Position numbers and translations under genes: made by a program
From: Dendrobates tinctorius
Lineage: Eukaryota
DNA length: 64,000 bases
Direction: 5' to 3'
Assembly (NCBI RefSeq): GCF_039654945.1
Contig: NW_027361687.1
Span: 34,906,001 to 34,970,000, forward strand
In this document: one piece after another, positions 9,970-64,000 of the stretch
Position numbering within the stretch: position 1 is the first letter of the stretch
Layout: every line of letters starts with the position of its first letter
Notes under the pieces: model-generated
What the model was told of the DNA's origin: nothing
The model's database searches: none
Seen by the model: the letters and a program-made list of their open reading frames with translations, nothing else

Positions 9970-25278
<15,309 letters not shown>

Positions 25279-49270: not shown

Positions 49271-49360
49271 ACGCCGCTCCTCTCCATGCTCGACCAAACC
49301 AGGAGCTTCAAATCCAGCGACAAGAAACCTAAAGGGCTGGGCGACTCCCGCAAGAAATAG
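49271..49360 (+). CDS. MPZ: MPZ exon 6 (last), to the canonical TAG
   Basis: TPLLSMLDQTRSFKSSDKKPKGLGDSRKK*. The six exons total 723 nt (240 aa). Confidence 0.93.
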   Translation, partial: TPLLSMLDQTRSFKSSDKKPKGLGDSRKK

Positions 49361-49564
49361 CAATTAGCAGGCAGGGAAGGTACACATAAGGCAGATACGG
49401 AGTCCCCTCGCAGCTCCAAGGTGATCTATACCATCGAAATGGAGCTGCGGGGGGATGAGGACGGGGACCAGCCCCGCCGAGTCGCGGTAAAGTCTCCCAG
49501 TAAGAACAGCCTCAAAAACGCCCTCAAGAATTTAATTAAAAGTGACTCAGAGAAACACCCTTAA
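49361..49564 (+). CDS. MPZ: L-MPZ stop-codon readthrough extension (67 codons)
   Basis: TAG CAA TTA, then QLAGREGTHKADTESPRSSKVIYTIEMELRGDEDGDQPRRVAVKSPSKNSLKNALKNLIKSDSEKHP*. Shares IEMELR, AVKSPS and SLKNALKN with recalled mammalian L-MPZ. Confidence 0.88.
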   Translation, partial: QLAGREGTHKADTESPRSSKVIYTIEMELRGDEDGDQPRRVAVKSPSKNSLKNALKNLIKSDSEKHP

Positions 49565-52211: not shown

Positions 52212-52364
<153 letters not shown>

Positions 52365-52379
52365 TCAGATAAAAAAAAT

Positions 52380-55043
52380 AACACTGCCCCCTAGGAACAA
52401 AAACGCCTATAATACTGCCCTTATGTAGAAGAATATAACTGCTATAATACTGCCCCATGTACAAGAATAAAACTACTATAATACTACCCCTATGTACAAG
52501 AATATAACTACTATATTACTGCCCCTATGTACAAGAAAATAACTACTATAATACCGCTCCTATGAACAGGAATATAACCACCATAATACTGCTCCATGTA
52601 CAAGAATATAACTACTATAATACTGCCCCTATATACAAGAATATAACTATTATAATACTGCCCCTATGTACAAGAATATAACTACTATAATACTGCCCCT
52701 ATGTGCAAGAATATAACTACTATAATACTGCCCCTATGTACAAGAATATAACTACTATAATACTGCCCCCTATATACAAGAATATAACTACAATACTACT
52801 CCTAAGTACAAGAGTATAACTACTATAATACTGCCCCCTATATACAAGAATATAACTACTATAATACTACTCCTAAGTACAAGACTATAACTACTATAAT
52901 ACTTCCCCTGTGTACAAGAATATAACTACTATAATACTGCTCCTATGTACAAGAATATAGCTACTATAATACTGCCCCTATGTACAAGAATATAACTACT
53001 ATAACACTGCCCCCTATGTACAAGAATATAACTACTATACCACTTCCCCCTATGTACAAGAATATAACTACTATATTACTGCCCCCTATGTACAAGAATA
53101 TAACTACTATAATACTGCCCCTATGTACAAGAATATAACTGCTATAATACTACCCCTATGTACAAGAACATAACTACCATATTACTCCTCCTATGTACAA
53201 GAAAATAACTACTATAATACTGCCCCTATGTACAAGAAAATAACTACTATAACACTGCCCCATGTACAAGAATATAACTACTATAACACTGCCCCCTATG
53301 TACAAGAATATAACTACTATAACACTGCCCCCTATGTCCAAGAATATAACTACTATAACACTGCCCCATGTACAAGAATATAACTACTATAATACTGCTC
53401 CTATGTACAAGATTATAACTACTATAATACTGCTCCTATGTACAAGAATATAACTACTATAATACTGCCCCCTATGTACTAGAGTATAACTACTATAATA
53501 CTGCCCCCTATGTACAAGAATATAACTACTATAATACTGCTCCCTATGTACAAGAATATAACTACTATAATACTACCCCAATGTACAAGAATATAACTAC
53601 TATAATACTGCCCCCTATGTACAAGAATATAACTACTATAATACTGCTCCCTATGTACAAGAATATAACTACTATAATACTACCCCAATGTACAAGAATA
53701 TAACTACTATAATACTGCCCCCTATGTACAAGAATATAACTACTATAATACTGCCCCCTATGTACAAGAATATAACTACTATAATACTGCCCCCTATGTA
53801 CAAGAATATAACTACTATAACACTGCCCCCTATGTACAAGAATATAACTACTATAATACTGTCCCCTATGTACAAGAATATGACTACTATAATACTGCCC
53901 CTATGTACAAGAATATAACTACTATAACACTGCCCCCTATGTCCAAGAATATAACTACTATAACACTGCCCCATGTACAAGAATATAACTACTATAATAC
54001 TGTCCCCTATGTACAAGAATATGACTACTATAATACTGCCCCTATGTACAAGAATATAACTACTATAACACTGCCCCCTATGTCCAAGAATATAACTACT
54101 ATAACACTGCCCCATGTACAAGAATATAACTACTATAATACTGCTCCTATGTACAAGAATATAACTACTATAATACTGCCCCTATGTACAAGAATATAAC
54201 TACTATGCCCCCTATGTTCAAGAATATTGTCATGGTTAGGACATGGTTAATGTCCTGTTCTGACAGGGTTAACATTGCCGGCCTCTCTTTGGATCTGGGA
54301 GGGGTATTTATGCTAACTCCATACTGGCATTCTCTGTCAGTTATACTGCTATTCTGGTGTGTCTGACCCCTGGTGTGTGTGTACTCTGCATTGTTTGTTT
54401 GCTTCCCGTGTATGACCCGGCTTGTTCCTTCACTCTGTACTCCGTCTCTCGTTTTTGGTACCATTGTCTTTTCCGGTTCTGACCTCCTGGCTTGGCTATC
54501 GTTACTCCGTTACAGTTTACCCCTATTGTACCGTCTAATACCTGTTCTGGTTTTCTGATCTATTGCTACGTCCTGACTATTCTTTCTGTCTAAGCCCTTA
54601 GGTACTGTCCTGCTATCTCGTGCTTTGACCCGGCTTGATCTGGTGTCTGTCTCTGTCTATGCTCCTTGGTAACATTGTCCTGTAGTTACCCTTCTAGGAG
54701 TTTCCCTGCAGCTCCTAGCTCTGTGGAGCTTAGGCCACGCCCCCAGCAGTCACGTGATTCAGGTCCTGGAGCATGCATTGTCACCACTGCTGCTCGCTCC
54801 GCAGGATCTTTGTGCACCGTCTTTGTACTCAGGACACGCGCCCTGGCTCAGTGAGCAAGTGCAGTGCGGTGTTCCTGACAAATATAACTACTATAACACT
54901 GCCCCCTATGTACAAGAATATAACTACTATAATACTGTCCCCTATGTACAAGAATGACTACTATAATACTGCCCCCTATGTACGAGAATATAACTACTAT
55001 AATACTGCCCCCTATGTACAAGAATATAACTACTATAATACTG
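52380..55043. repeat. 35/36-bp minisatellite in the PCP4L1 intron (interrupted by a solo LTR)
   Basis: Unit ACTACTATAATACTGCCCCCTATGTACAAGAATATA. Confidence 0.97.
54228..54880. mobile_element. Solo LTR (653 bp)
   Basis: TGTCA...TGACA termini with an exact 5-bp TSD AATAT (54223-54227 and 54881-54885). Confidence 0.88.
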
Positions 55044-55081
55044 CCTCCTAGCTGTGAGGTTGTGTGTCAGTGGTTCTCCTG

Positions 55082-57865
55082 ATGTCTGGAGCAAGCCCAG
55101 GGAGTGGCCACCCTGGGCGGGGAAGCTCCCCTGGCAAGGCCCAGGCTTCCCGGCCTACACTGGGACTAGGCTCTCAGGCTTCTACTAATGGGAATGTTAA
55201 TCCCAAAGCCGCTGTGAGTCCAGTGAATGCAGCGAGTCAAAGCTGCAGCAGTTCTATGAAGAAAGAAACAGTTGTGAGTAAACTTTTGGGAGGAAAACCT
55301 TCTCCAGTTCCAGCAAAGAAGCCAGAAGGAAAAGTGTCAGTGAGTGATGGAAACCAGCAGAATGTGAAGTCTTGTAGCTCCCCAGTCAGTCAGCAGCTCC
55401 TGCCAGGTGCACAGGTGAGATCGGCCCCAGCTGTGCAGATCACCTCTGCTGCTTCCAGGCAGAGACGGACGTCTTTGGAAAGGCAGACAATGCAGGAGAA
55501 CCTACAGCAGCATGGCAGTATGGCGCGGTCAGGACGCACACGGTCACAGTCAGGTGGCAGCGATAAACCTGCTGCGGAGCCTGCATCCAGCCAAGGGGCC
55601 ACAAAACCATCTATGGTGGACCCGCACAAGACAGGATTCAAAACCCCTGTACCCGTGGTCAAGACTAAGCCTGTGGAGCCGGCGCGTGCACCCGAGCTGC
55701 AGCTAGCGGATGAGATACCGGGACTTGTCCGAAAACTGGGTGAGTTACAGCAGCAAAAAAAAGCGCTGCAAATGGAGGTAGACTTCATCTATAGTCTAAA
55801 GACCGCTAATCCTGCCAGTAATGAGGCGTATGACCTGAGACTGAACACACTGGGTGTACAGCTGGCGAGTGTTGTGCAGGACACTGAGTCTGTGCTGGAG
55901 AGCATGGGGCCCCTGGCAGAGACCTACAGGAACCGCGAGCGGTTCGCCTCCTATAAGCAGGACTGTGCTGTAGAGGCCAGGACCCCTGATGTTCAGGACG
56001 GGACCCCCCAGCAGCGGACACGGCCAGTGTTACAGGCTGCCCGCTTCTGCTTCCAGGAGGGGAAACAGCTGCAGCAGCAGGCAGCTCAGTGTGAACAGGA
56101 GCATACACTTCAGACTGCAGCAGAGGCACCACAGGTCCCAGAATGCCCCAAACAGGAGCAGGACAGTGTATGTGAGACTATTTGTGCTGATGAGGCAGCC
56201 GAGTGTGAACAGGAGCATACACTGCAGACTCCAGCAGAGGCACCACAGGTCCCAGAATGCCCCACACAGGAGCAGGACAGTGTATGTGAGACTGTTTGTG
56301 CTGATGAGGCCGAGGCTGAGGCTGAAGCACAGACTGTGGCTGGGGATGCTGTGCCCATGGGGTCGGGGGTTGGAGGGGTTTCATATTCTGTATTGGACGT
56401 CGCACTGTCTGATGATAATGATGCTGCTTATGATAATGTGCATGATATGTGTGATTATCCCCCTTTGCCATCTAGTCCACAAGGTGTGACATCCCCCCCT
56501 GCAGGCCCTCTCCCTGTCAGTCAGCCCAGTGTGACCCGGCAGGTGCCCCCCAGGAATGCCTGGAGCCGCGGCGCCCCATCCTTCACTTCCAGCGCCAGGT
56601 ACACCGGCCAGACATTCAAGCGCATTAATGTGGTGCGGTTTAAATACATAGGTGCCAAGGAGGATCTGCCACAACGCAGGTATGTGGTGAGAGAGCTGCT
56701 CTGCGGCCAGATGGGGTTTGTGGCAAATGAGATACTGGCAGTGTCTAATCTTCAGGACAGGCAGGGCTACGAGGTCAGCTTCAAGCTCATGTCTGACCTG
56801 GATAGATTCTGGGCCAATTACCCCAAGTTCAGAGATGCTGAGGGCTGGAATAAGTTTGTGTTGGTTCCTATCTCCAGGCCAGACACTGTCACAGTGAATA
56901 TCACCTTCTGGAATGAGGCCGTTCCTCCACAGGACATCGAGGTGTGGCTCCGGAGACACTGTGACCTCGTCTCTGGACTCACCAAGGTCAGAGATGAGGA
57001 TGGTATCTGGACAATGGGGTGGCGGGTCTTGGTAAAATTGCGGCAATGTAATAACATCACTGCCCACTTACCCAACTCCTTCTTCATTGGGAGGGAGAAG
57101 GGAAGGTGTTATTATCCCGGGCAACCCAGAAAGTGCTTCAAATGTGGTGGGAAAGGTCATCTGGCTAACGCCTGTACTGTGGTGAAGTGCAGTCTGTGTG
57201 GGGCAATCGGCCATGTCGCTGCAGACTGCCGGGACGTCAGGTGCAACCTCTGTGGTAAGATGGGCCACCCTCACAGGGACTGTCCAGATGCCTGGCACAA
57301 CATCTGCAGAGTCTTCCCTGATGAGTTAGTGATGGCAGGGGCAGAGGCTCAGGAGGATGAGGATGTGGTGGCAGGGACACATGAGGAGGAGTGTTTAATG
57401 TCAGGAGAGATGTTGACCAGCTCAGATGCCCACCAGGAGTCCACTCAGGCAGCACCAGAGAAGCAGGGTGCAGAGGGGAACATGGAGGTCGTCCATCAGG
57501 TCCAGCAGCCTCAGATAGCCCCCCCTTCAGCATCGCTGTCTGTATCTGATGACTGGAACATTAATAATAATAAAAGGAAGAAAAAGAACACATCCTCCCG
57601 TAAACCTGAGGCAGAATATGACACTGGTCAGAGTGCTAGTAAGAAGGTTCAGAATTCTGCAGGAGTGATGGTCGTGTCCAACAAGTATGGAGTTTTATCT
57701 GACTCCAATGGTGACGATTATGAGGAAGAGTTGAGGAAAGTTGATGCTGAGTGTGACAGGGACATAGAGGACCATCCCCCACCAAAGCGGAAGCCCTTAT
57801 CTGTAGACCCTCAGGTAGAGTCTGACATGGACACCAGTGGTGGACAGAACATCTCTGACTCATGA
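55082..57865 (+). CDS. Retrotransposon ORF1 (gag-like; coiled coil, RRM-like region, 3 CCHC knuckles; ZCCHC3-like)
   Basis: First ATG at 55082. CFKCGGKGHLANAC, CSLCGAIGHVAADC and CNLCGKMGHPHRDC; no internal stops. Confidence 0.9.
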   Translation: MSGASPGSGHPGRGSSPGKAQASRPTLGLGSQASTNGNVNPKAAVSPVNAASQSCSSSMKKETVVSKLLGGKPSPVPAKKPEGKVSVSDGNQQNVKSCSSPVSQQLLPGAQVRSAPAVQITSAASRQRRTSLERQTMQENLQQHGSMARSGRTRSQSGGSDKPAAEPASSQGATKPSMVDPHKTGFKTPVPVVKTKPVEPARAPELQLADEIPGLVRKLGELQQQKKALQMEVDFIYSLKTANPASNEAYDLRLNTLGVQLASVVQDTESVLESMGPLAETYRNRERFASYKQDCAVEARTPDVQDGTPQQRTRPVLQAARFCFQEGKQLQQQAAQCEQEHTLQTAAEAPQVPECPKQEQDSVCETICADEAAECEQEHTLQTPAEAPQVPECPTQEQDSVCETVCADEAEAEAEAQTVAGDAVPMGSGVGGVSYSVLDVALSDDNDAAYDNVHDMCDYPPLPSSPQGVTSPPAGPLPVSQPSVTRQVPPRNAWSRGAPSFTSSARYTGQTFKRINVVRFKYIGAKEDLPQRRYVVRELLCGQMGFVANEILAVSNLQDRQGYEVSFKLMSDLDRFWANYPKFRDAEGWNKFVLVPISRPDTVTVNITFWNEAVPPQDIEVWLRRHCDLVSGLTKVRDEDGIWTMGWRVLVKLRQCNNITAHLPNSFFIGREKGRCYYPGQPRKCFKCGGKGHLANACTVVKCSLCGAIGHVAADCRDVRCNLCGKMGHPHRDCPDAWHNICRVFPDELVMAGAEAQEDEDVVAGTHEEECLMSGEMLTSSDAHQESTQAAPEKQGAEGNMEVVHQVQQPQIAPPSASLSVSDDWNINNNKRKKKNTSSRKPEAEYDTGQSASKKVQNSAGVMVVSNKYGVLSDSNGDDYEEELRKVDAECDRDIEDHPPPKRKPLSVDPQVESDMDTSGGQNISDS

Positions 57866-60800
57866 TGATGGCTATTACTCTGCTCTTTCTATATTGTGTT
57901 GTGATGGCGGGGTTCTCATTGACAGTGACCTCGAGCAATGTGAATAGCATTAAGCTGAGGAGAACTAGACACACGGTGTATGAACATCTCAAATATCTGG
58001 ACACAGATGTCATCTTCCTGCAGGAGACACGACTGACATCTCTGGGGCTTATGAGAGAGGCTGAGAGGGAATGGCGGTCCGGTCCTTCTTTCTGGTCACT
58101 GGCTGTGGAGCCTTACGCCGGGGTCGCTGTCCTGTTTAACACCAATGATGTGACTGTGCATAGGATGACGGAGGTGGTCATGGGAAGATGTCTGGTCCTG
58201 GAAGTCACTGTCCATGGGAGGCGACTCCGGCTTATTAACATCTATGGGCCACAGACAGTGACGGACAGGATCCAGCTGTTTAATGACGTCAAGCCTTACC
58301 TCTTCACTTCTCTTCCAGTGGTGATGGCGGGGGACTTTAATGCCATAATGACATCAGGTGACAGCTCCTCGGGCAGGGCAGTGACCAGGGACGGTAAGGT
58401 CCTACATAACGTTATAATGCAGGCAGGACTGACCGACGTTTTCACACAGGGTGGGCGACAGCCAAAATTCACGTATTCATGTTCCAACAGGAGCAGTAGG
58501 ATAGATTTTGCTTTTGTCAGTCCTACTGAGGCTGTCGGCGCCCTGAGTGAGAAGGTCGTCCCTTACTCTGATCACCTCGCCTTGTCCTTCTCTTTGGGTT
58601 CCTCTAACCGTCCGGACATTGGTAGAGGGTTGTGGAAGCTTAATTCCAGTCTCCTGGATGATGCCTATGTTCAGAGCCGTGTTCACTCCCTTATCCAGCT
58701 TCATCTAGACAGGGTTGACTTCTATGACAACATGACCGACTGGTGGGAGGACGTCAAGGAGGATATCAGATCCCTCTTAAAGAGACTGTCAGTTAATAAA
58801 GGGAGGAATAAGTACAGCCAGTACCTAAAGCTGCGCAAAGAATTGGAGTCACTGTATTCGGCGGGCGGGGATGACAAAGTGAAGATCGACCGGCTGAAAT
58901 CTGAGATAAAGCAGTATCAGTATAGCAGGTATACCTCCCTGGTTCTTGAACGGGATTATGGGTCCTTAGGGGCCCCTGATCCCTTTGAGAATTGCAGGGA
59001 GAGGGTGGCCAAAAAAATGGTCACGGGTCTCATTGACTCCCAGGGTGTATTGCAGGATTCACGGGAGGGTATCCTGGAGGTGGTGAGATCTTACTATGCT
59101 GACTTGTTTCAGAGGAAAGTTTTGGATAAAGATAAGATGGCTCAATTCTTGGAGGCAACTCCAGCGCCTGATACTAATGATCTGGACTTTTCTCCTTTGA
59201 CAGCAGAATTAACGGTGGAAGAAGTTAAGGAGGCTATTGATAAGTTATATCTGAAGAAGGCACCAGGTCCAGATGGTATAACGGCAGAATTTTATAAGAA
59301 ATTTAGAGACCTCCTGGCTCCAATTCTCGTGGATGTGTATAGAAATTGTCTAGAAAATCACCTGATGCCTCCATCCATGAGAGTGTCCTCGTTAATTCTG
59401 CTGTCTAAAGGTAAAGAGCCGAGTGACATCAAGAACTGGAGGCCGATTGCCCTCTTGAATGTGGACAGGAAGATTCTAGCAAAGATCCTATTTTCTAGAT
59501 TAGTCTGTTTGTCCCCGGCACTGTTGGCAGGCTCTCAGTTTGGCACAGTAAAAGGGCGGAACATCTCTGGAGCAGTCATCTCGATACGAGAGATGTTTGA
59601 GAGATGTAAAGCTCTGCGGTGTGGGAGATATGTTGTTAGTCTGGACCAGGCTAAAGCCTTTGACAGGGTTGATCATGACTATCTGTGGGCCACTTTGTCA
59701 AAGTACGGTATTCCGGGACAATTTGTGGATTGGGTGAAGACGTTGTACAGAGAGGCGGTGAGCTTTCCTCTGATTAATGGTTGGCAGGGTGACACTTTTG
59801 GAGTTGGGGCGGGGGTGAGACAGGGTTGCGCAATGAGTCCGCTCCTGTATGTTTTTGCCCTAGACCCGTTTCTGAGGTCACTGCAGGAGTGCGATTTTCA
59901 GGGGGTGCCGGTCCCCCACTGCCCGCCTCTGAATGTTGTTGCCTATGCGGACGATGTGACGCTGGTGATCTCCAATCCTCGTGAGGTGCAGATGTTATCT
60001 GCGTCCATCAGAAGCTACTCAGAGGCCTCCGGGTCTCTGGTCAACCTTGAAAAGAGTCAAGCTCTGTGGACATTAGATACTGAGCCCAGCTTTGATCTGC
60101 CGCAGTTTTCCAAAGCCTCCACCCATATTAAGATCCTAGGGGTTAAATTTGGGAGGGATGATAATGCCACGCTAAATTGGGAGGAGAAATTGGAAACCGG
60201 AAATGCAAAGGTTCAACGATGGAAGAACTGGAGGCTGACCTACAGAGAAAGGGTCACAATGTTGAAGACTTACCTGGTCCCCGTTTTCTTGTATGTCTCT
60301 GTCATTTTCCCTTTACCAGAATCTTTCTCAGCGAGGCTCTTCAGCCTGTTCTTCCAGCTCTTGTGGGGGAATAGGATGAACCTGATAAAGAGGGGAATAA
60401 CATACCTACGGCGGAGAGAGGGTGGGCTGGATATGTTGAATCCAAGGGTTTTCTTTGACTCCTTGTTTCTAAAGGTGAATTTTGGGAACATGGACTCAAA
60501 CAGTAGCTCCCTGTGGGTAAATAGTATCAGGTACTGGATATTGCCTTTTGCAGAATCTTGGGTGCGAGGCGGCAGTCTCAAGAGGAGGAGATGGACAGGT
60601 GACCACCTCCCCCAGTATCTGGACTATGGTCTGAAGTGTGTTAGGAGGTGGGGACTGGAGAGGTCTTACATTGAGAGCAGTACGAGAAGAGACCTGTATG
60701 CTCGTGTATGTAGGACTTTCTTCTACTCTCCACTGGCCCTGAGAGATTGTGTCACCACCACCCTGCAGGAAAGCCTTAGGTTCCTAAACGGGAAACGGCT

Positions 60801-61266
60801 TCCTCCTAAACTGTTTGATGTCACTTGGCTTTCACTGCATAGTCGGCTCTTTGTCAGAGGGAACCTGAAACATCTGTGTGTCTCTGATCGGAATTGTCCC
60901 CTTGGTTGTCAGCAGGAGGAAACTATGGAGCACTTTATATGTGATTGCTGGGGAGGGAGGAAGATCTGGGAGGAAGTGTCAGATAATCTAAAAATCCCCA
61001 GACTGCGGACTCTAAAGTATCCTGACATAATCTATGGTGTCCCCTCCACTGTTAGTAACATCAACAGAGAGACAATGTACATTATAATCAGTGTCATCAA
61101 ATACTATCACTGGCACATGAGAACCCGGGTGTCACTGCACAATGAGCCGTTCGATCACACCGCTGCCGCCAATCAGGTTATGTCAGAACTCCGGTGGATA
61201 AAATCACTAGAAGTTGGAAGGAGTCCAAGAAACATAACGTTATGGAGAAACGTAAAATTCAGTTAG
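57862..61266 (+). CDS. Retrotransposon ORF2 (APE endonuclease, reverse transcriptase, C-terminal Zn motif)
   Basis: NVNS, FLQET, AGDFN, SRID, SDH; KAPGPDG, NWRPIALLN, DQAKAFD, GVRQG, YADD; CPLGC..E..EHF..C; 1134 aa uninterrupted. Confidence 0.95.
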   Translation: MMMAITLLFLYCVVMAGFSLTVTSSNVNSIKLRRTRHTVYEHLKYLDTDVIFLQETRLTSLGLMREAEREWRSGPSFWSLAVEPYAGVAVLFNTNDVTVHRMTEVVMGRCLVLEVTVHGRRLRLINIYGPQTVTDRIQLFNDVKPYLFTSLPVVMAGDFNAIMTSGDSSSGRAVTRDGKVLHNVIMQAGLTDVFTQGGRQPKFTYSCSNRSSRIDFAFVSPTEAVGALSEKVVPYSDHLALSFSLGSSNRPDIGRGLWKLNSSLLDDAYVQSRVHSLIQLHLDRVDFYDNMTDWWEDVKEDIRSLLKRLSVNKGRNKYSQYLKLRKELESLYSAGGDDKVKIDRLKSEIKQYQYSRYTSLVLERDYGSLGAPDPFENCRERVAKKMVTGLIDSQGVLQDSREGILEVVRSYYADLFQRKVLDKDKMAQFLEATPAPDTNDLDFSPLTAELTVEEVKEAIDKLYLKKAPGPDGITAEFYKKFRDLLAPILVDVYRNCLENHLMPPSMRVSSLILLSKGKEPSDIKNWRPIALLNVDRKILAKILFSRLVCLSPALLAGSQFGTVKGRNISGAVISIREMFERCKALRCGRYVVSLDQAKAFDRVDHDYLWATLSKYGIPGQFVDWVKTLYREAVSFPLINGWQGDTFGVGAGVRQGCAMSPLLYVFALDPFLRSLQECDFQGVPVPHCPPLNVVAYADDVTLVISNPREVQMLSASIRSYSEASGSLVNLEKSQALWTLDTEPSFDLPQFSKASTHIKILGVKFGRDDNATLNWEEKLETGNAKVQRWKNWRLTYRERVTMLKTYLVPVFLYVSVIFPLPESFSARLFSLFFQLLWGNRMNLIKRGITYLRRREGGLDMLNPRVFFDSLFLKVNFGNMDSNSSSLWVNSIRYWILPFAESWVRGGSLKRRRWTGDHLPQYLDYGLKCVRRWGLERSYIESSTRRDLYARVCRTFFYSPLALRDCVTTTLQESLRFLNGKRLPPKLFDVTWLSLHSRLFVRGNLKHLCVSDRNCPLGCQQEETMEHFICDCWGGRKIWEEVSDNLKIPRLRTLKYPDIIYGVPSTVSNINRETMYIIISVIKYYHWHMRTRVSLHNEPFDHTAAANQVMSELRWIKSLEVGRSPRNITLWRNVKFS

Positions 61267-61494
61267 AAAATATGATAATGTTTTTTTGTTTTTTTTTTTG
61301 TGTTTTTTTTTTTGTGTTTTTTTTCCCTCTAACTTTTTTTTTCCATCCTCAGGTGTGGACACTTTAATTTATTGATGAATATGATCTGATTATTAGTGCT
61401 GTGTATATATTACCTAAGTGGTTTGTGTTTTGTAATACTGGATGATTTTTGTTTTATTATAATTGTATTTATGTTTGGGTTTTATAATAAAAAT

Positions 61495-61852
61495 TGCCCC
61501 CTATGTACAAGAATATAACTACTATAATACTGTCCCCTATGTACAAGAATGACTACTATAATACTGCCCCCTATGTACGAGAATATAACTACTATAATAC
61601 TGCCCCCTATGTACAAGAATATAACTACTATAATACTGTCCCCTATGTACAAGAATATGACTACTATAATACTGCCCCCTATGTACAAGAATATAACTAC
61701 TATAATACTGCCCCTATGTACAAGAATATAACTACTATAATACTGCCCCCTATGTACAAGAATATAACTACTATAATACTGCCTCCTATGTGCAAGAATA
61801 TAACTACTATAATACTACCCCTATGTGCAAGAATATAACTACTATAATACTG
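61495..61852. repeat. 35/36-bp minisatellite between the two retrotransposon copies
   Basis: Same unit as 52380-55043, about 10 copies. Confidence 0.95.
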
Positions 61853-64000
61853 CCTCCTAGCTGTGAGGTTGTGTGTCTGTGGTTCTCCTCATGTCTGGAG
61901 CAAGCCCAGGGAGGGGCCACCCTGGGCGGGGAAGCTCCTCAAGCAAGGCCCTGGCTTCCAGGCCTACACTGGGAGGAAACTCCCAACCTTCTCATGTGGA
62001 TGGAAATCCTAGAGTTGCCTCTGGGGAAAATAAACCTCAGCATGGAGAAAGATCATGTGTTGAAGCTCAGTACAGGAAAGAAAGAGGAGAAAGCTTTGTT
62101 TGTCTGCAAGGATGTTGCAGTTAAACAGCCAGGTCAAGGCAAACAGTGTCCAGAGCCTGGAAGGAAATCCCAGAAGACATCTTCTGCTGAGAACCTGAGT
62201 GCTGGAGGGCAGGTGGCTGAACAGAAGGTGAGGCAGAGTCCATTACCAGCCTCAGGTGTGCAGCTCACTCCAGGCAGACAGAGATGGACATCTCTGGAGA
62301 AGCAAACACTCCAGGAGAACCTTCAGCTGAGACATGTGGTGACCAGCATGGCAAACTCTGGACGCACGAGATTGCAGGATGGTGGCAGCTGTAAAAGTGT
62401 TGCGGAGGCTGGAGCCACAAAACCAGCGATATTAAAACCAAGGTGTCACCCCCTAAAGCAAGACCCCAGAAGGAGCCGCCGCGTGCCCTGGAGCTACAGC
62501 TGGCAGAGGAGAGACCAGAACTGGTCAGGAGGATTGGTGAGGTACAGCAGCAGAGGAATCTTCTGCAAATAGAAATTGACTGCATTTACAAGGTGAAGGC
62601 TGCTAATCCTGGGGATCTCCCTGTATATGACCAGAGACTGAATGCACTGGGGGTAGAGCTGGCGACTGTGGTGCGGGACATGGACTGTGTGCTGGCGAAG
62701 ATGGGGCCCCTGGCAGAGACATATAGGAACCAGGAGCGGTTTAGGTCCTACACGCAGGACTCTGCTGGCTCCCGCACAGACATTGTCCCAGGTGGGACCT
62801 GGCAGCAGGTACGGCAGGTGCTGCAGCCCGCTAGCTTCTGTTTCAAGGAGGGTCAGATACTGCACCAGCAGCCGAAACTACCTGCGGCAGACCCCAAGCA
62901 GGAGCAGGAGGCTCAGATCCCAGCGGTACCACAAGTCCCAGCATACCCAGCACAACAGCAAGACAGTGGACATGAGACTGCATCTACTGTTGGTGTCCAG
63001 GAGAGCACTAATTCTGGGGATATTGATACTGTTCATGTGGGGTTGGGGGCTGAAGGGAGTACAGAGTCTGTGGTGGACATTGCGCATCCTTATGACTCTA
63101 TTGAGATTGATGATGATGATGATAATAATATGCAAAATGTCTGTGATTTCCCCCCTTTGGTTTCCAGCACACAAGGTGCAACAGGCCCCTCCGCTGCAGA
63201 CCCTCGCCCTGTCAGTCAGCCCACTGTGGCCGCACAGGTCCCTCCCAGTAATGTTTGGAGCCGCGGTGCTCCGTCCTTTACCTCCGGCGCCAGTTACACC
63301 GGGCAGGCATTCAAAAGGAGGAATGTGGTGCGGTTCAGGCACAGAGGTGCCAAGGAGGACCTGCCAGACAGGAGGCTGGTGGTCAGGGAGCTCCTGTGCC
63401 GCCAGATGGGGTTTGCGTCGGTTAATATCTTGGCGGTCATCAATCTGCCAGACAGACAGGGCTATGACATCAGTTTTAAGCTCATATCTGATCTGAACAG
63501 ATTCTGGGCCAATTTCCCCAAGTTCAGGGACGCTGATGGCTGGAATAAATTCAGCTTCATTCCAATATCTAAGCCAGATACCGCCATGGTTAATATCTTT
63601 TGGAATGAGGCTGTTCCCCTGCAGGACATTGTGGTGTGGTTCCGGAGGCATTGTGACCTTGTCTCCGACCTCACCAAAAACAGGGATGAGGAAGGTATAT
63701 GGACCGGTGGGTGGAAGGTGCTGGTGAAACTGCACCAGCACAACAATATCACGGCTCACTTACCCAACTCCTTCTTTATCGGGAGGGAGAAGGGGGTTTG
63801 CTTCAACCCTGGGCAGCCACGAAAGTGTTTTAAGTGTGGTAAAGTGGGTCACCTGGCAAACACCTGTACCGTGGTAAAGTGCAGCCTGTGCGGGGAAGTC
63901 GGCCACTTAGCGGCAGATTGCCAGAACATCAAGTGCAACCTCTGTGGGGAGATCGGCCACCCTCACAGGGACTGTCCAGATGCCTGGCACAATATATGCA
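61853..64000 (+). mobile_element. Second, diverged Tx1-like copy (5' end and frameshifted ORF1; runs off the window)
   Basis: Same 5' start CCTCCTAGCTGTGAGGTTGTGTGTC. ORF1 homology switches frame twice, with a stop at 62122-62124, then reads open from about 62480 through three CCHC knuckles. Confidence 0.9.

What the first reader, a model, noticed from the sequence alone, without database searches (positions are those of the whole stretch)
54900..64000. Tx1-like retrotransposon family apparently targeted to a 36-bp minisatellite
Seen: two clearly diverged copies, one intact and one frameshifted, lie in the same orientation in the same array. Both begin at the identical register, ...ACTATAATACTG|CCTCCTAGCTGTGAGG (55044 and 61853). 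Their divergence argues against a recent tandem duplication. Known: Tx1-group elements are often target-specific (Tx1L/Tx2L in Xenopus, Keno in U2 snRNA genes, Mutsu in 5S rDNA, Dewa in tRNA spacers, Kibi/Koshi in microsatellites). Inference: this family uses a dispersed intronic minisatellite as its safe-haven target, a pairing I do not recognise as described.
Basis: partly seen in the sequence, partly recalled or inferred. Interest (0 to 1): 0.85.

Follow-up and report, generated by a model that had tools for sequence, protein, structure and literature searches.

The report
Frog LINE that targets one minisatellite
A young, apparently intact L1/Tx1-type jumping gene of a poison-frog genome inserts almost only at one fixed position of a 36-base tandem repeat, and the same jumping gene and repeat are found together in five other frog families, so this is a clear new example of a known kind of target-specific retrotransposon.

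Summary

- **The two copies.** Copy 1 (55045-61494) is a full-length non-LTR retrotransposon with open ORF1 and ORF2. Copy 2 (from 61854) has a frameshifted ORF1 and is only about 75-78% identical to copy 1. Both start at the same position of the 36-bp unit.
- **Own genome (6.36 Gb).** Of 765 exact 5' starts, 728 carry the satellite flank. Of 77 exact 3' ends, 75 do. All 5 exceptions that I fetched are point variants of the same junction.
- **The satellite is independent of the element.** It has about 97,600 exact units and forms arrays that hold no element.
- **Copies are independent insertions.** Elements are 98-100% alike, but their flanks are only 90-94% alike.
- **Target duplication.** Copy 1 is bracketed by a perfect 144-bp (4-unit) duplication.
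- **Other species.** Related elements sit in the same satellite in Anomaloglossus, Phyllobates, Leptodactylus, Hyla and Rhinoderma. A Xenopus tropicalis relative sits in a different, 100-bp repeat.

Best reading: sequence-specific target-primed retrotransposition into the satellite.

Tx1-clade membership is plausible (RRM-like plus CCHC ORF1, strict target specificity) but was not tested against labelled references. Tx1 families with satellite targets are already listed as a category in Kojima 2015.

Other first-reader notes of this scan report the same family, and similar ones, elsewhere in this genome.

Verdict: new member of a known kind, moderately interesting.

The parts
52407..54227 (+). 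Upstream part of the 36-bp minisatellite array (about 51 units). This is the target sequence.
   Evidence: TRF period 35-36, 91% matches. 59 unit matches in the window against 0 expected by chance.
54881..55044 (+). Satellite units directly upstream of copy 1. 54901-55044 is the upstream copy of the 144-bp target duplication.
   Evidence: Identical to 61495-61638 with 0 mismatches. The private variants CAAGAATGACTAC and TGTACGAGAATA occur only in these two places in the window.
55045..61494 (+). Copy 1: full-length non-LTR retrotransposon, about 6.45 kb. The 5' boundary is ambiguous between 55043 and 55052.
   Evidence: Open ORF1 and ORF2. 98-100% identical to at least 77 other copies in the genome.
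55082..57865 (+). ORF1, 927 aa: RBD_ZCCHC3 1st and 2nd domains plus three CCHC knuckles (Type I ORF1). The 5' UTR is only 37 nt.
   Evidence: Pfam PF23057 7.7e-21, PF23058 1.7e-26, PF00098 3.1e-08. Knuckles at residues 685, 703 and 721.
57862..61266 (+). ORF2, 1134 aa: apurinic-type endonuclease, reverse transcriptase (YADD at residue 695) and zf-RVT. Its start overlaps the ORF1 stop (ATGA).
   Evidence: Pfam PF03372 6.9e-14, PF00078 1.4e-35, PF13966 5e-06. Human L1 ORF2p 7.4e-87. Motifs.
61267..61494 (+). 3' UTR with a T-rich tract of variable length. It ends ...TTTTATAATAAAAAT (AATAAA at 61486-61491) with no poly(A) tail.
   Evidence: UTR length is 222-265 nt among copies, and the end and junction are the same in 30/30 loci.
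61495..61853 (+). Ten satellite units between the two elements. 61495-61638 is the downstream copy of the 144-bp target duplication.
61854..64000 (+). Copy 2: 5' part of a second element from an old separate sub-lineage. Its ORF1 is disrupted by frame changes, and it is cut by the window end.

Best explanation
This is a family of autonomous non-LTR retrotransposons of the L1 superfamily, most likely the Tx1 clade. It integrates by target-primed reverse transcription at one fixed site of a dispersed 36-bp minisatellite, between ...CTACTATAATAC and TGCCCC(C)TATG...

**Inferred mechanism (not shown).**
- The ORF2 endonuclease nicks the bottom strand at 5'-GGGGCA^GTATTAT-3'. The freed 3' end primes reverse transcription of an RNA that ends ...TATAATAAAAAT.
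- The RNA carries satellite-like ends. Its 5' TGCCTCCTA mimics the unit's TGCCCCCTA, and its 3' TATAATA mimics the unit's TATAATAC.
- These ends probably help to set both junctions by annealing. That would explain the constant register, the absence of 5'-truncated copies, and target duplications that are whole numbers of units (144 bp = 4 units at copy 1).
- Both junctions rebuild most of the target site, so later insertions pile up head-to-tail in the same array, as with copies 1 and 2 here.

**Shown.** The family-wide association and register, the independence of the insertions, the coding capacity, the 144-bp duplication at copy 1, and the conservation of the LINE-satellite pair across hyloid frogs.

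**Not shown.** The nick site, the role of end homology, and where the promoter lies.
For: 1. **Register genome-wide.** 728 of 765 exact 5' starts and 75 of 77 exact 3' ends carry the satellite flank. All 5 fetched exceptions are single-base variants of the same junction. 29/29 and 30/30 fetched loci agree.
2. **The satellite stands on its own.** It has 97,638 exact 36-mers and arrays without any element. Array outer flanks are unrelated to each other. The unit has no homology inside the element.
3. **Sharp break in similarity at the ends.** ORF2 3' parts are 99.5-100% identical and the first 300 bp are 98.6% identical, while adjoining flanks are 94% and 90%.
4. **Target duplication.** A perfect 144-bp duplication abuts both ends of copy 1 and carries variants found nowhere else in the window.
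5. **Several old lineages share the junctions.** Copy 1 against copy 2 is 77.7% identical, while copy 1 against other genera is 88.9%. A third 5' type and an ORF1-only 3.1-kb derivative use the same junctions.
6. **Same satellite in other species.** It appears in Anomaloglossus (5' side; that copy's 3' end is interrupted), in Phyllobates, Leptodactylus and Rhinoderma (both sides), and in Hyla (upstream, with a second element abutting the 3' end). The X. tropicalis relative lies in another tandem repeat with about 25 bp of target duplication and the same TAATAAAAAT end.
7. **Coding capacity.** Open APE and RT reading frames and a Type I ORF1.
Against: - No biochemical evidence for endonuclease specificity, and no empty or filled allele pair was examined.
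- A clean long target duplication is shown only for copy 1. Other candidates (773 and 284 bp) are 97.2% identical against a 94-96% background between neighbouring blocks once gaps are allowed. One apparent case turned out to be a higher-order repeat of the array.
- No 5'-truncated copies were seen (0/30 and 0/14). This is unusual for L1-like elements and would also fit spread at the DNA level.
- Some neighbouring copies are identical (L024/L025, L020/L021) and may be local unequal-crossover duplicates.
- Flanks are somewhat more alike close to the junctions than further out.
- The exact-pattern counts only see copies whose terminal 24 bases are unmutated.
- The poly(A) RNA reads gave low coverage on the element and no start site.
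Confidence: 0.85

Rival explanations
1. The satellite is not just a passive target. It is carried or generated by the element through read-through or upstream-initiated transcripts and through unit-multiple target duplications. On this reading the LINE and the satellite spread together, and the LINE helps to seed, amplify and homogenise its own target arrays.
For: - The commonest unit differs by only 1-2 bases among six hyloid species, while the LINE's ORF1 region is 74-89% identical.
- The element's two ends mimic the two halves of the target site, and the variant TGCCTCCTA is inherited with the element rather than copied from each flank.
- Insertion duplicated 4 units at copy 1.
- The 5' UTR is only 37 nt, so a promoter may lie in the satellite.
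- RNA reads span the 3' end-satellite junction (loose end at 55009).
Against: - Satellite units outnumber element ends by more than 100 to 1, and arrays without elements exist.
- Flanking units differ between copies at the normal satellite level.
- No part of the unit is found inside the element.
- No array was seen to start at an element end.
- Satellite conservation over 36 bases is statistically weak evidence.
Confidence: 0.1
2. The association arose once, and the copies spread at the DNA level. The routes would be unequal crossing-over within arrays, segmental duplication, or ectopic recombination and gene conversion between satellite arrays, without sequence-specific retrotransposition.
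For: - Head-to-tail clusters are common.
- Some neighbours are 99.9-100% identical (L024/L025, L020/L021).
- Arrays show higher-order repeats made by unequal exchange.
- No 5' truncations were seen.
Against: - Near-identical copies lie on at least 45 different contigs, with flanks that differ by 6-10% right up to the junction.
- Identical copies occur on different contigs (L012/L019).
- Lineages that split before the frog genera did still use the same site.
- The reading frames are intact.
- The neighbour of copy 1 is a 78%-identical lineage, not a duplicate.
Confidence: 0.04
3. The shared register of the two window copies is a chance coincidence in a repeat-rich region.
For: Two copies alone would share one of 36 registers by chance about 3% of the time.
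Against: 728/765 and 75/77 genome-wide, plus the same junction in five other species.
Confidence: 0.01

Closest known systems
Tx1L in Tx1D of Xenopus laevis (Garrett et al. 1989; Christensen et al. 2000, as cited in PMC4494074)
   Same: A frog APE-type LINE that inserts at one specific sequence inside another repeated element. It has an ORF1 with zinc knuckles and produces head-to-tail occupancy of a repeated target.
   Different: The target there is a site inside a piggyBac-type DNA transposon. Here it is a free-standing 36-bp minisatellite whose arrays have unrelated outer flanks. No hit named Tx1 appeared in three protein searches, and the X. laevis relatives found are only 40-43% identical.
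Kibi and Koshi (Tx1 clade, teleosts)
   Same: Tx1-clade LINEs specific for tandem repeats (PMC4494074, PMC3812793).
   Different: Their targets are (TC)n and (TTC)n microsatellites, where register carries almost no information. Here a 36-bp unit is cut at 1 of 36 positions.
Tx1 families marked 'Sat' (satellite target) in Fig. 3 of Kojima 2015, and Tx1-Mar of crocodilians (PMC4494074)
   Same: Target-specific Tx1 families whose targets are satellites or other repeats. They meet the same operational criterion, with the target seen in more than 20% of flanks.
   Different: The names, hosts and satellite sequences of the 'Sat' families could not be read because the figure and supplements are not held. 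The X. tropicalis relative in a 100-bp repeat may be one of them. The hyloid 36-bp pair was not found in any paper searched.
TRAS1/SART1 in telomeric (TTAGG)n and R1/R2 in 28S rDNA of insects
   Same: Strict insertion at one position of a tandemly repeated target. The RNA ends pair with the target to fix the junction, and the association lasts a long evolutionary time (own knowledge; R1Bm in PMC1919474).
   Different: These belong to different clades (R1, R2), and their targets have host functions. Here the target is a non-coding minisatellite with no known function.
Human L1 (ORF2p structures 8uw3, 8sxt)
   Same: The best solved relative of ORF2 (7.4e-87 over residues 19-900), with the same APE-RT architecture.
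   Different: L1 has a Type II ORF1 (Transposase_22), a poly(A) tail, loose TTTT/AA target choice and mostly 5'-truncated copies. None of these apply here.

Membership tests
L1-superfamily non-LTR retrotransposon | ORF2 with an N-terminal apurinic-type endonuclease and a reverse transcriptase | tested here: met
   PF03372 6.9e-14 and PF00078 1.4e-35. YADD at residue 695. Human L1 ORF2p is the best solved match at 7.4e-87, far above R2 at about 1e-20.
L1-superfamily non-LTR retrotransposon | No long terminal repeats, and insertion flanked by a target-site duplication | tested here: met
   The ends are unlike each other. A 144-bp perfect duplication abuts both ends of copy 1. The X. tropicalis relative has about 25 bp of duplication.
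Tx1 clade | RT domain clusters with Tx1L, Keno, Kibi and other labelled references rather than with vertebrate L1 | not testable with these tools
   No labelled Tx1 reference sequence could be obtained. No hit carried a Tx1 name. Indirect evidence only: fish elements with the same ORF1 type score higher (406-414 bits) than human L1 ORF2p (295 bits).
Tx1 clade | Type I ORF1 (RRM-like domain plus CCHC knuckles, no Transposase_22), described as consistent with the Tx1 clade in non-mammalian animals (PMC5203782) | tested here: met
   PF23057, PF23058 and PF00098 hits and no Transposase_22 hit. Three CCHC knuckles.
Target-specific non-LTR retrotransposon (criterion of PMC4494074: one kind of sequence in more than 20% of flanks) | The same target sequence flanks the family | tested here: met
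   95% of 5' ends and 97% of 3' ends by exact pattern. 59/59 fetched loci. The exceptions fetched are variants of the same junction.
Target-specific non-LTR retrotransposon | The encoded endonuclease cleaves the target sequence specifically | not testable with these tools
   This needs a nicking assay with the purified domain.
Tx1L of Xenopus laevis itself | Close sequence relationship and the Tx1D target | tested here: not met
   The best Xenopus relatives are 40-61% identical, and none is named Tx1. The target here is a minisatellite, and the X. tropicalis relative lies in a 100-bp repeat.

The most novel reading that the evidence does not exclude
The LINE and the 36-bp minisatellite form a co-evolving pair that has lasted since the radiation of hyloid frogs. 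The element not only uses the satellite as a safe landing site but also maintains it. It would do so through unit-multiple target duplications, tandem re-insertion at rebuilt target sites, and perhaps transcription from the satellite. That would explain why the unit is better conserved than the LINE's own coding sequence. Related frog lineages would have switched to other tandem repeats: a 100-bp repeat in Xenopus tropicalis, and possibly 62- and 86-bp repeats in this genome according to unchecked notes of this scan.
Probability: 0.2. Interest if true: 0.7.

Novelty: new member of a known kind. Interest (0 to 1): 0.5.

Why it matters
- **A clean model of target specificity.** Target-specific LINEs are models for how an apurinic-type endonuclease and RNA-target pairing can direct integration to one site, and they are starting points for site-directed insertion tools. 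This family offers a 36-bp unit with one site, hundreds of near-identical full-length copies with open frames, a natural ORF1-only derivative, and relatives with a different tandem-repeat target for comparison.
- **A long-lived association.** The same LINE-satellite pair in six hyloid species of different families shows that a non-genic minisatellite can serve as a safe haven for a long time.
- **An open question.** It raises the question of whether such elements shape the minisatellite-rich genomes of frogs.
- **Practical use.** The family and its satellite should be annotated together in frog genomes, where they are currently labelled 'uncharacterized protein'.

Tried and rejected
- **Naming the clade.** Three protein searches and the protein atlas returned no relative named Tx1. 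No labelled reference was available, so I built no RT tree.
- **Fetching more copies.** I tried to fetch 20 complete copies of 10 kb for an unbiased survey of target duplications. Only small fetches worked afterwards.
- **Long target duplications as a general feature.** A first gapless scan suggested 773-, 284- and about 1477-bp cases. With gapped alignment and controls they are weak, at 97.2% against a 94-96% background. In the L023/L036 case the match is a SINE-bearing higher-order repeat, and there is no second element at the predicted place. Only the 144-bp case of copy 1 stands.
- **A larger carrier transposon (as Tx1D is for Tx1L).** The outer flanks of different arrays share nothing. 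Non-satellite flank pieces are either neighbouring LINE copies or unrelated sequence.
- **Satellite derived from the element.** No match longer than 8 bases.
- **Transcription start.** In poly(A) RNA reads of a run listed as sharing the best holders' species label (coded as a different organism), the element has low coverage (0-11 reads) and no start site. The satellite itself is abundant on both strands. Other runs are contigs only and of uncertain kind.
- **Related contig of another species (L096).** It ends 55 bp after the ORF2 stop, so it has no flank.
- **Ascaphus locus (L107).** It holds only an ORF1 fragment and is uninformative.
- **Papers.** The supplements of PMC4494074 and the Tx1L endonuclease paper (PMC85248) are not held.
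Full report
**What is there.**
The right end of the window holds one array of a 35-36-bp minisatellite. Its commonest unit is TGCCCCCTATGTACAAGAATATAACTACTATAATAC, and it occupies 52407-54206, 54881-55050 and 61495-61859. Three things interrupt the array:
- a 653-bp solo-LTR-like insertion at 54228-54880;
- a full-length retrotransposon, copy 1, at 55045-61494;
- the 5' 2.1 kb of a second one, copy 2, from 61854 to the window end.

Copy 1 has two open frames. ORF1 runs from ATG 55082 to 57865 (927 aa) and carries the two RNA-binding domains that Pfam names after ZCCHC3, plus three CCHC knuckles. ORF2 runs 57862-61266 (1134 aa) and carries an apurinic-type endonuclease, a reverse transcriptase with YADD, and zf-RVT. 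Its start overlaps the ORF1 stop as ATGA. The 5' UTR is 37 nt. The 3' UTR ends ...TTTTATAATAAAAAT without a poly(A) tail.

**The observation.**
Both 5' junctions read ...CTATAATACTG|CCTCCTAGCTGTGAGG at the stated coordinates. The copies are about 75% identical with many indels. In the conserved ORF1 region they are 77.7% identical, while copy 1 is 88.9% identical to elements of Anomaloglossus and Phyllobates. The two lineages therefore separated before those frog genera did. The pair cannot be a recent tandem duplicate.

**Genome-wide test.**
The window lies in a 6.36-Gb assembly. Exact-pattern counts over the whole genome gave the following.

| Pattern | Exact hits | With satellite flank |
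|---|---|---|
| First 24 bases after TG (5' start) | 765 | 728 with ATAATACTG |
| Last 24 bases of copy 1's sub-family (3' end) | 77 | 75 with TGCCCC |

I fetched three 5' exceptions and both 3' exceptions. All five are single-base variants of the same satellite at the same register.

Among loci fetched with 1.5-kb flanks, 29 of 29 5' ends and 30 of 30 3' ends show the same junctions...ATAATAC|TGCCTCCTAGCTG and ...ATAATAAAAAT|TGCCCC(C)TATG. At least three 5' sequence types share the junction.

A 3.1-kb ORF1-only derivative has the same two ends and junctions. It explains a recurrent spacing of about 3.3 kb between 5' starts.

**Target, or part of the element?**
- The satellite has 97,638 exact 36-mers, over a hundred times the number of element ends.
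- Arrays without elements exist, and their outer flanks are unrelated to each other.
- The unit has no counterpart inside the element.
- Copies are 99.5-100% identical over the last 1.76 kb of ORF2 and 98.6% over the first 300 bp. The adjoining 144 bp of flank is only 94% (5' side) and 90% (3' side) identical between loci. Similarity breaks at the element ends, as expected for independent insertions and not for co-duplicated segments.
- Copy 1 is bracketed by a perfect 144-bp (four-unit) duplication, 54901-55044 = 61495-61638. It carries two variants that occur nowhere else in the window.

Other apparent long duplications did not survive controls. With gaps allowed, the 773- and 284-bp cases are 97.2% identical against 94-96% between neighbouring blocks. 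A third case is a SINE-bearing higher-order repeat of the array. So I claim the long target duplication for copy 1 only.

**Unusual traits.**
- No 5'-truncated copy was seen. None of 30 copies is truncated within the last 1.76 kb. All 14 3' ends on contigs C9-C28 have a 5' start 6.3-7.7 kb upstream (12 in the exact 24-mer list, 2 with slightly changed starts found by similarity).
- Elements often stand head-to-tail in one array. 8 of the 22 non-satellite flank pieces are neighbouring copies. In Hyla two elements abut with no unit between them.
- The element's first nine bases, TGCCTCCTA, mimic the unit's TGCCCCCTA. They are constant in all copies whatever the neighbouring units read, so they travel with the RNA. 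The last bases, TATAATAAAAAT, echo the unit's TATAATAC.

**Mechanism (inferred).**
The pattern fits target-primed reverse transcription at a bottom-strand nick between ...ATAATAC and TGCC.... The satellite-like RNA ends would help to fix both junctions by pairing. On this reading only full-length cDNA can be joined, which accounts for the lack of truncations. The second-strand join can land in any downstream unit, which accounts for duplications of whole units. Both junctions rebuild most of the site, which accounts for the tandem pile-ups.

None of these steps was tested. The promoter is unknown. Poly(A) RNA reads gave 0-11 reads on the element, no start site, and heavy coverage of the satellite on both strands.

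**Other species.**
The closest ORF1 relatives (86-90%) come from dendrobatoid frogs, so the host is probably a poison frog. I do not name it. Loci fetched from public assemblies show related elements as follows.

| Species | Satellite and junctions |
|---|---|
| Anomaloglossus baeobatrachus | Same 36-bp satellite on the 5' side; the 3' end of that copy is interrupted |
| Phyllobates terribilis | Same satellite on both sides |
| Leptodactylus fuscus | Same satellite on both sides |
| Hyla sarda | Same satellite upstream; a second element abuts the 3' end |
| Rhinoderma darwinii | Same satellite on both sides |
| Xenopus tropicalis (52% aa in ORF2) | A different, 100-bp tandem repeat, about 25 bp of target duplication, same ...TAATAAAAAT end |
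| Aquarana (bullfrog) | 5' end preceded by unrelated sequence |

The five species holding the 36-bp satellite belong to five families: Aromobatidae, Dendrobatidae, Leptodactylidae, Hylidae and Rhinodermatidae. Hyloidea membership was checked by taxonomy look-up for three of them.

The commonest unit differs by only one or two bases among these species, and its last 24 bases do not vary. The elements are 74-89% identical over the same comparisons. This frog LINE lineage therefore specialises in tandem repeats and has changed target at least once.

**Comparison with what is known.**
ORF2 belongs to the L1 superfamily (human L1 ORF2p 7.4e-87). ORF1 is Type I, which Ivancevic et al. describe as consistent with the Tx1 clade in non-mammalian animals (PMC5203782). 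Kojima (PMC4494074) states that many Tx1-clade families are target-specific: Tx1L in a piggyBac transposon, Keno in U2 genes, Kibi and Koshi in microsatellites. That paper's Fig. 3 legend lists 'Sat, satellites' among known Tx1 targets.

Its criterion for specificity, more than 20% of flanks, is far exceeded here. I could not obtain labelled reference sequences, so clade membership remains probable rather than shown. No paper in the held library describes this satellite or this pairing.

Other first-reader notes of this scan report the same family in the '35-bp minisatellite' elsewhere in this genome. They also report similar elements in 62-bp and 81/86-bp minisatellites. I did not check those.

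**Verdict.**
The kind of element is known. The particular target, the strictness of the register, the lack of truncated copies, and the persistence of the pair across hyloid frogs are new details worth recording.

Noticed in passing
window 54228-54880: A 653-bp insertion splits the satellite array. It has TG...CA ends and a 5-bp duplication AATAT (54223-54227 and 54881-54885), so it looks like a solo LTR.
   Followed up: partly
L104 (G000:C14:23362434-23365538): A derivative of the LINE about 3.1 kb long, with ORF1 only (no ORF2). It has the same 5' start, the same ...AATAAAAAT end and the same satellite junctions. Pairs of 5' starts about 3.3 kb apart on C9, C14, C20 and C21 suggest that it is common.
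   Followed up: partly
L102:8371-8771 and 15430-15715 (Xenopus tropicalis): A relative (52% aa identity in ORF2) is inserted in a 100-bp tandem repeat, with about 25 bp of target duplication. This is a different tandem-repeat target in the same LINE lineage.
   Followed up: partly
L100:15270-15300 (Hyla sarda): Two elements lie head-to-tail with no satellite unit between them: ...CTAATAAAAAT|TGCCTCCTAGCTGTGAGG.
   Followed up: no
window 54980-55053: The satellite itself is abundant in poly(A) RNA reads on both strands (depth about 270-580), against 0-11 on the element's 5' kilobase.
   Followed up: no
window 52213-52362 (minus strand) and 49272-49361 (plus strand): A minus-strand exon ends ...[33 protein letters not shown]. 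By my own recollection this is a PCP4/PCP4L1-like IQ motif. The satellite begins about 40 bp upstream of its splice acceptor. An MPZ-like last exon lies upstream on the plus strand. Another note of this scan reports the same satellite ending at an exon acceptor of a different gene.
   Followed up: partly
L023, L036, L105 (G000:C213:11870435-11880100): A block of about 1 kb of satellite containing a 237-bp SINE-like insertion is repeated within one array, with 99.3% identity over 300 bp beside the SINE and the same insertion site. This is a higher-order repeat made by unequal exchange, and it mimics a very long target duplication.
   Followed up: yes
window 56079-56310: An in-frame tandem duplication (114 bp x 2, 94% matches) lies inside ORF1 of copy 1.
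   Followed up: no
window 1-52400: Most of the window's first 46 kb is a chain of different minisatellite arrays, with units of 41, 76, about 33, 30, 44, 34, 35 and 48 bp.
   Followed up: no
L103 (Pelobates cultripes) and L106 (Aquarana catesbeiana): Pelobates has two relatives in tandem, each followed by a short 43-bp repeat. The bullfrog relative starts TAGCTGTGG... after unrelated, CCCGGGAC-rich sequence. Their targets were not worked out.
   Followed up: no
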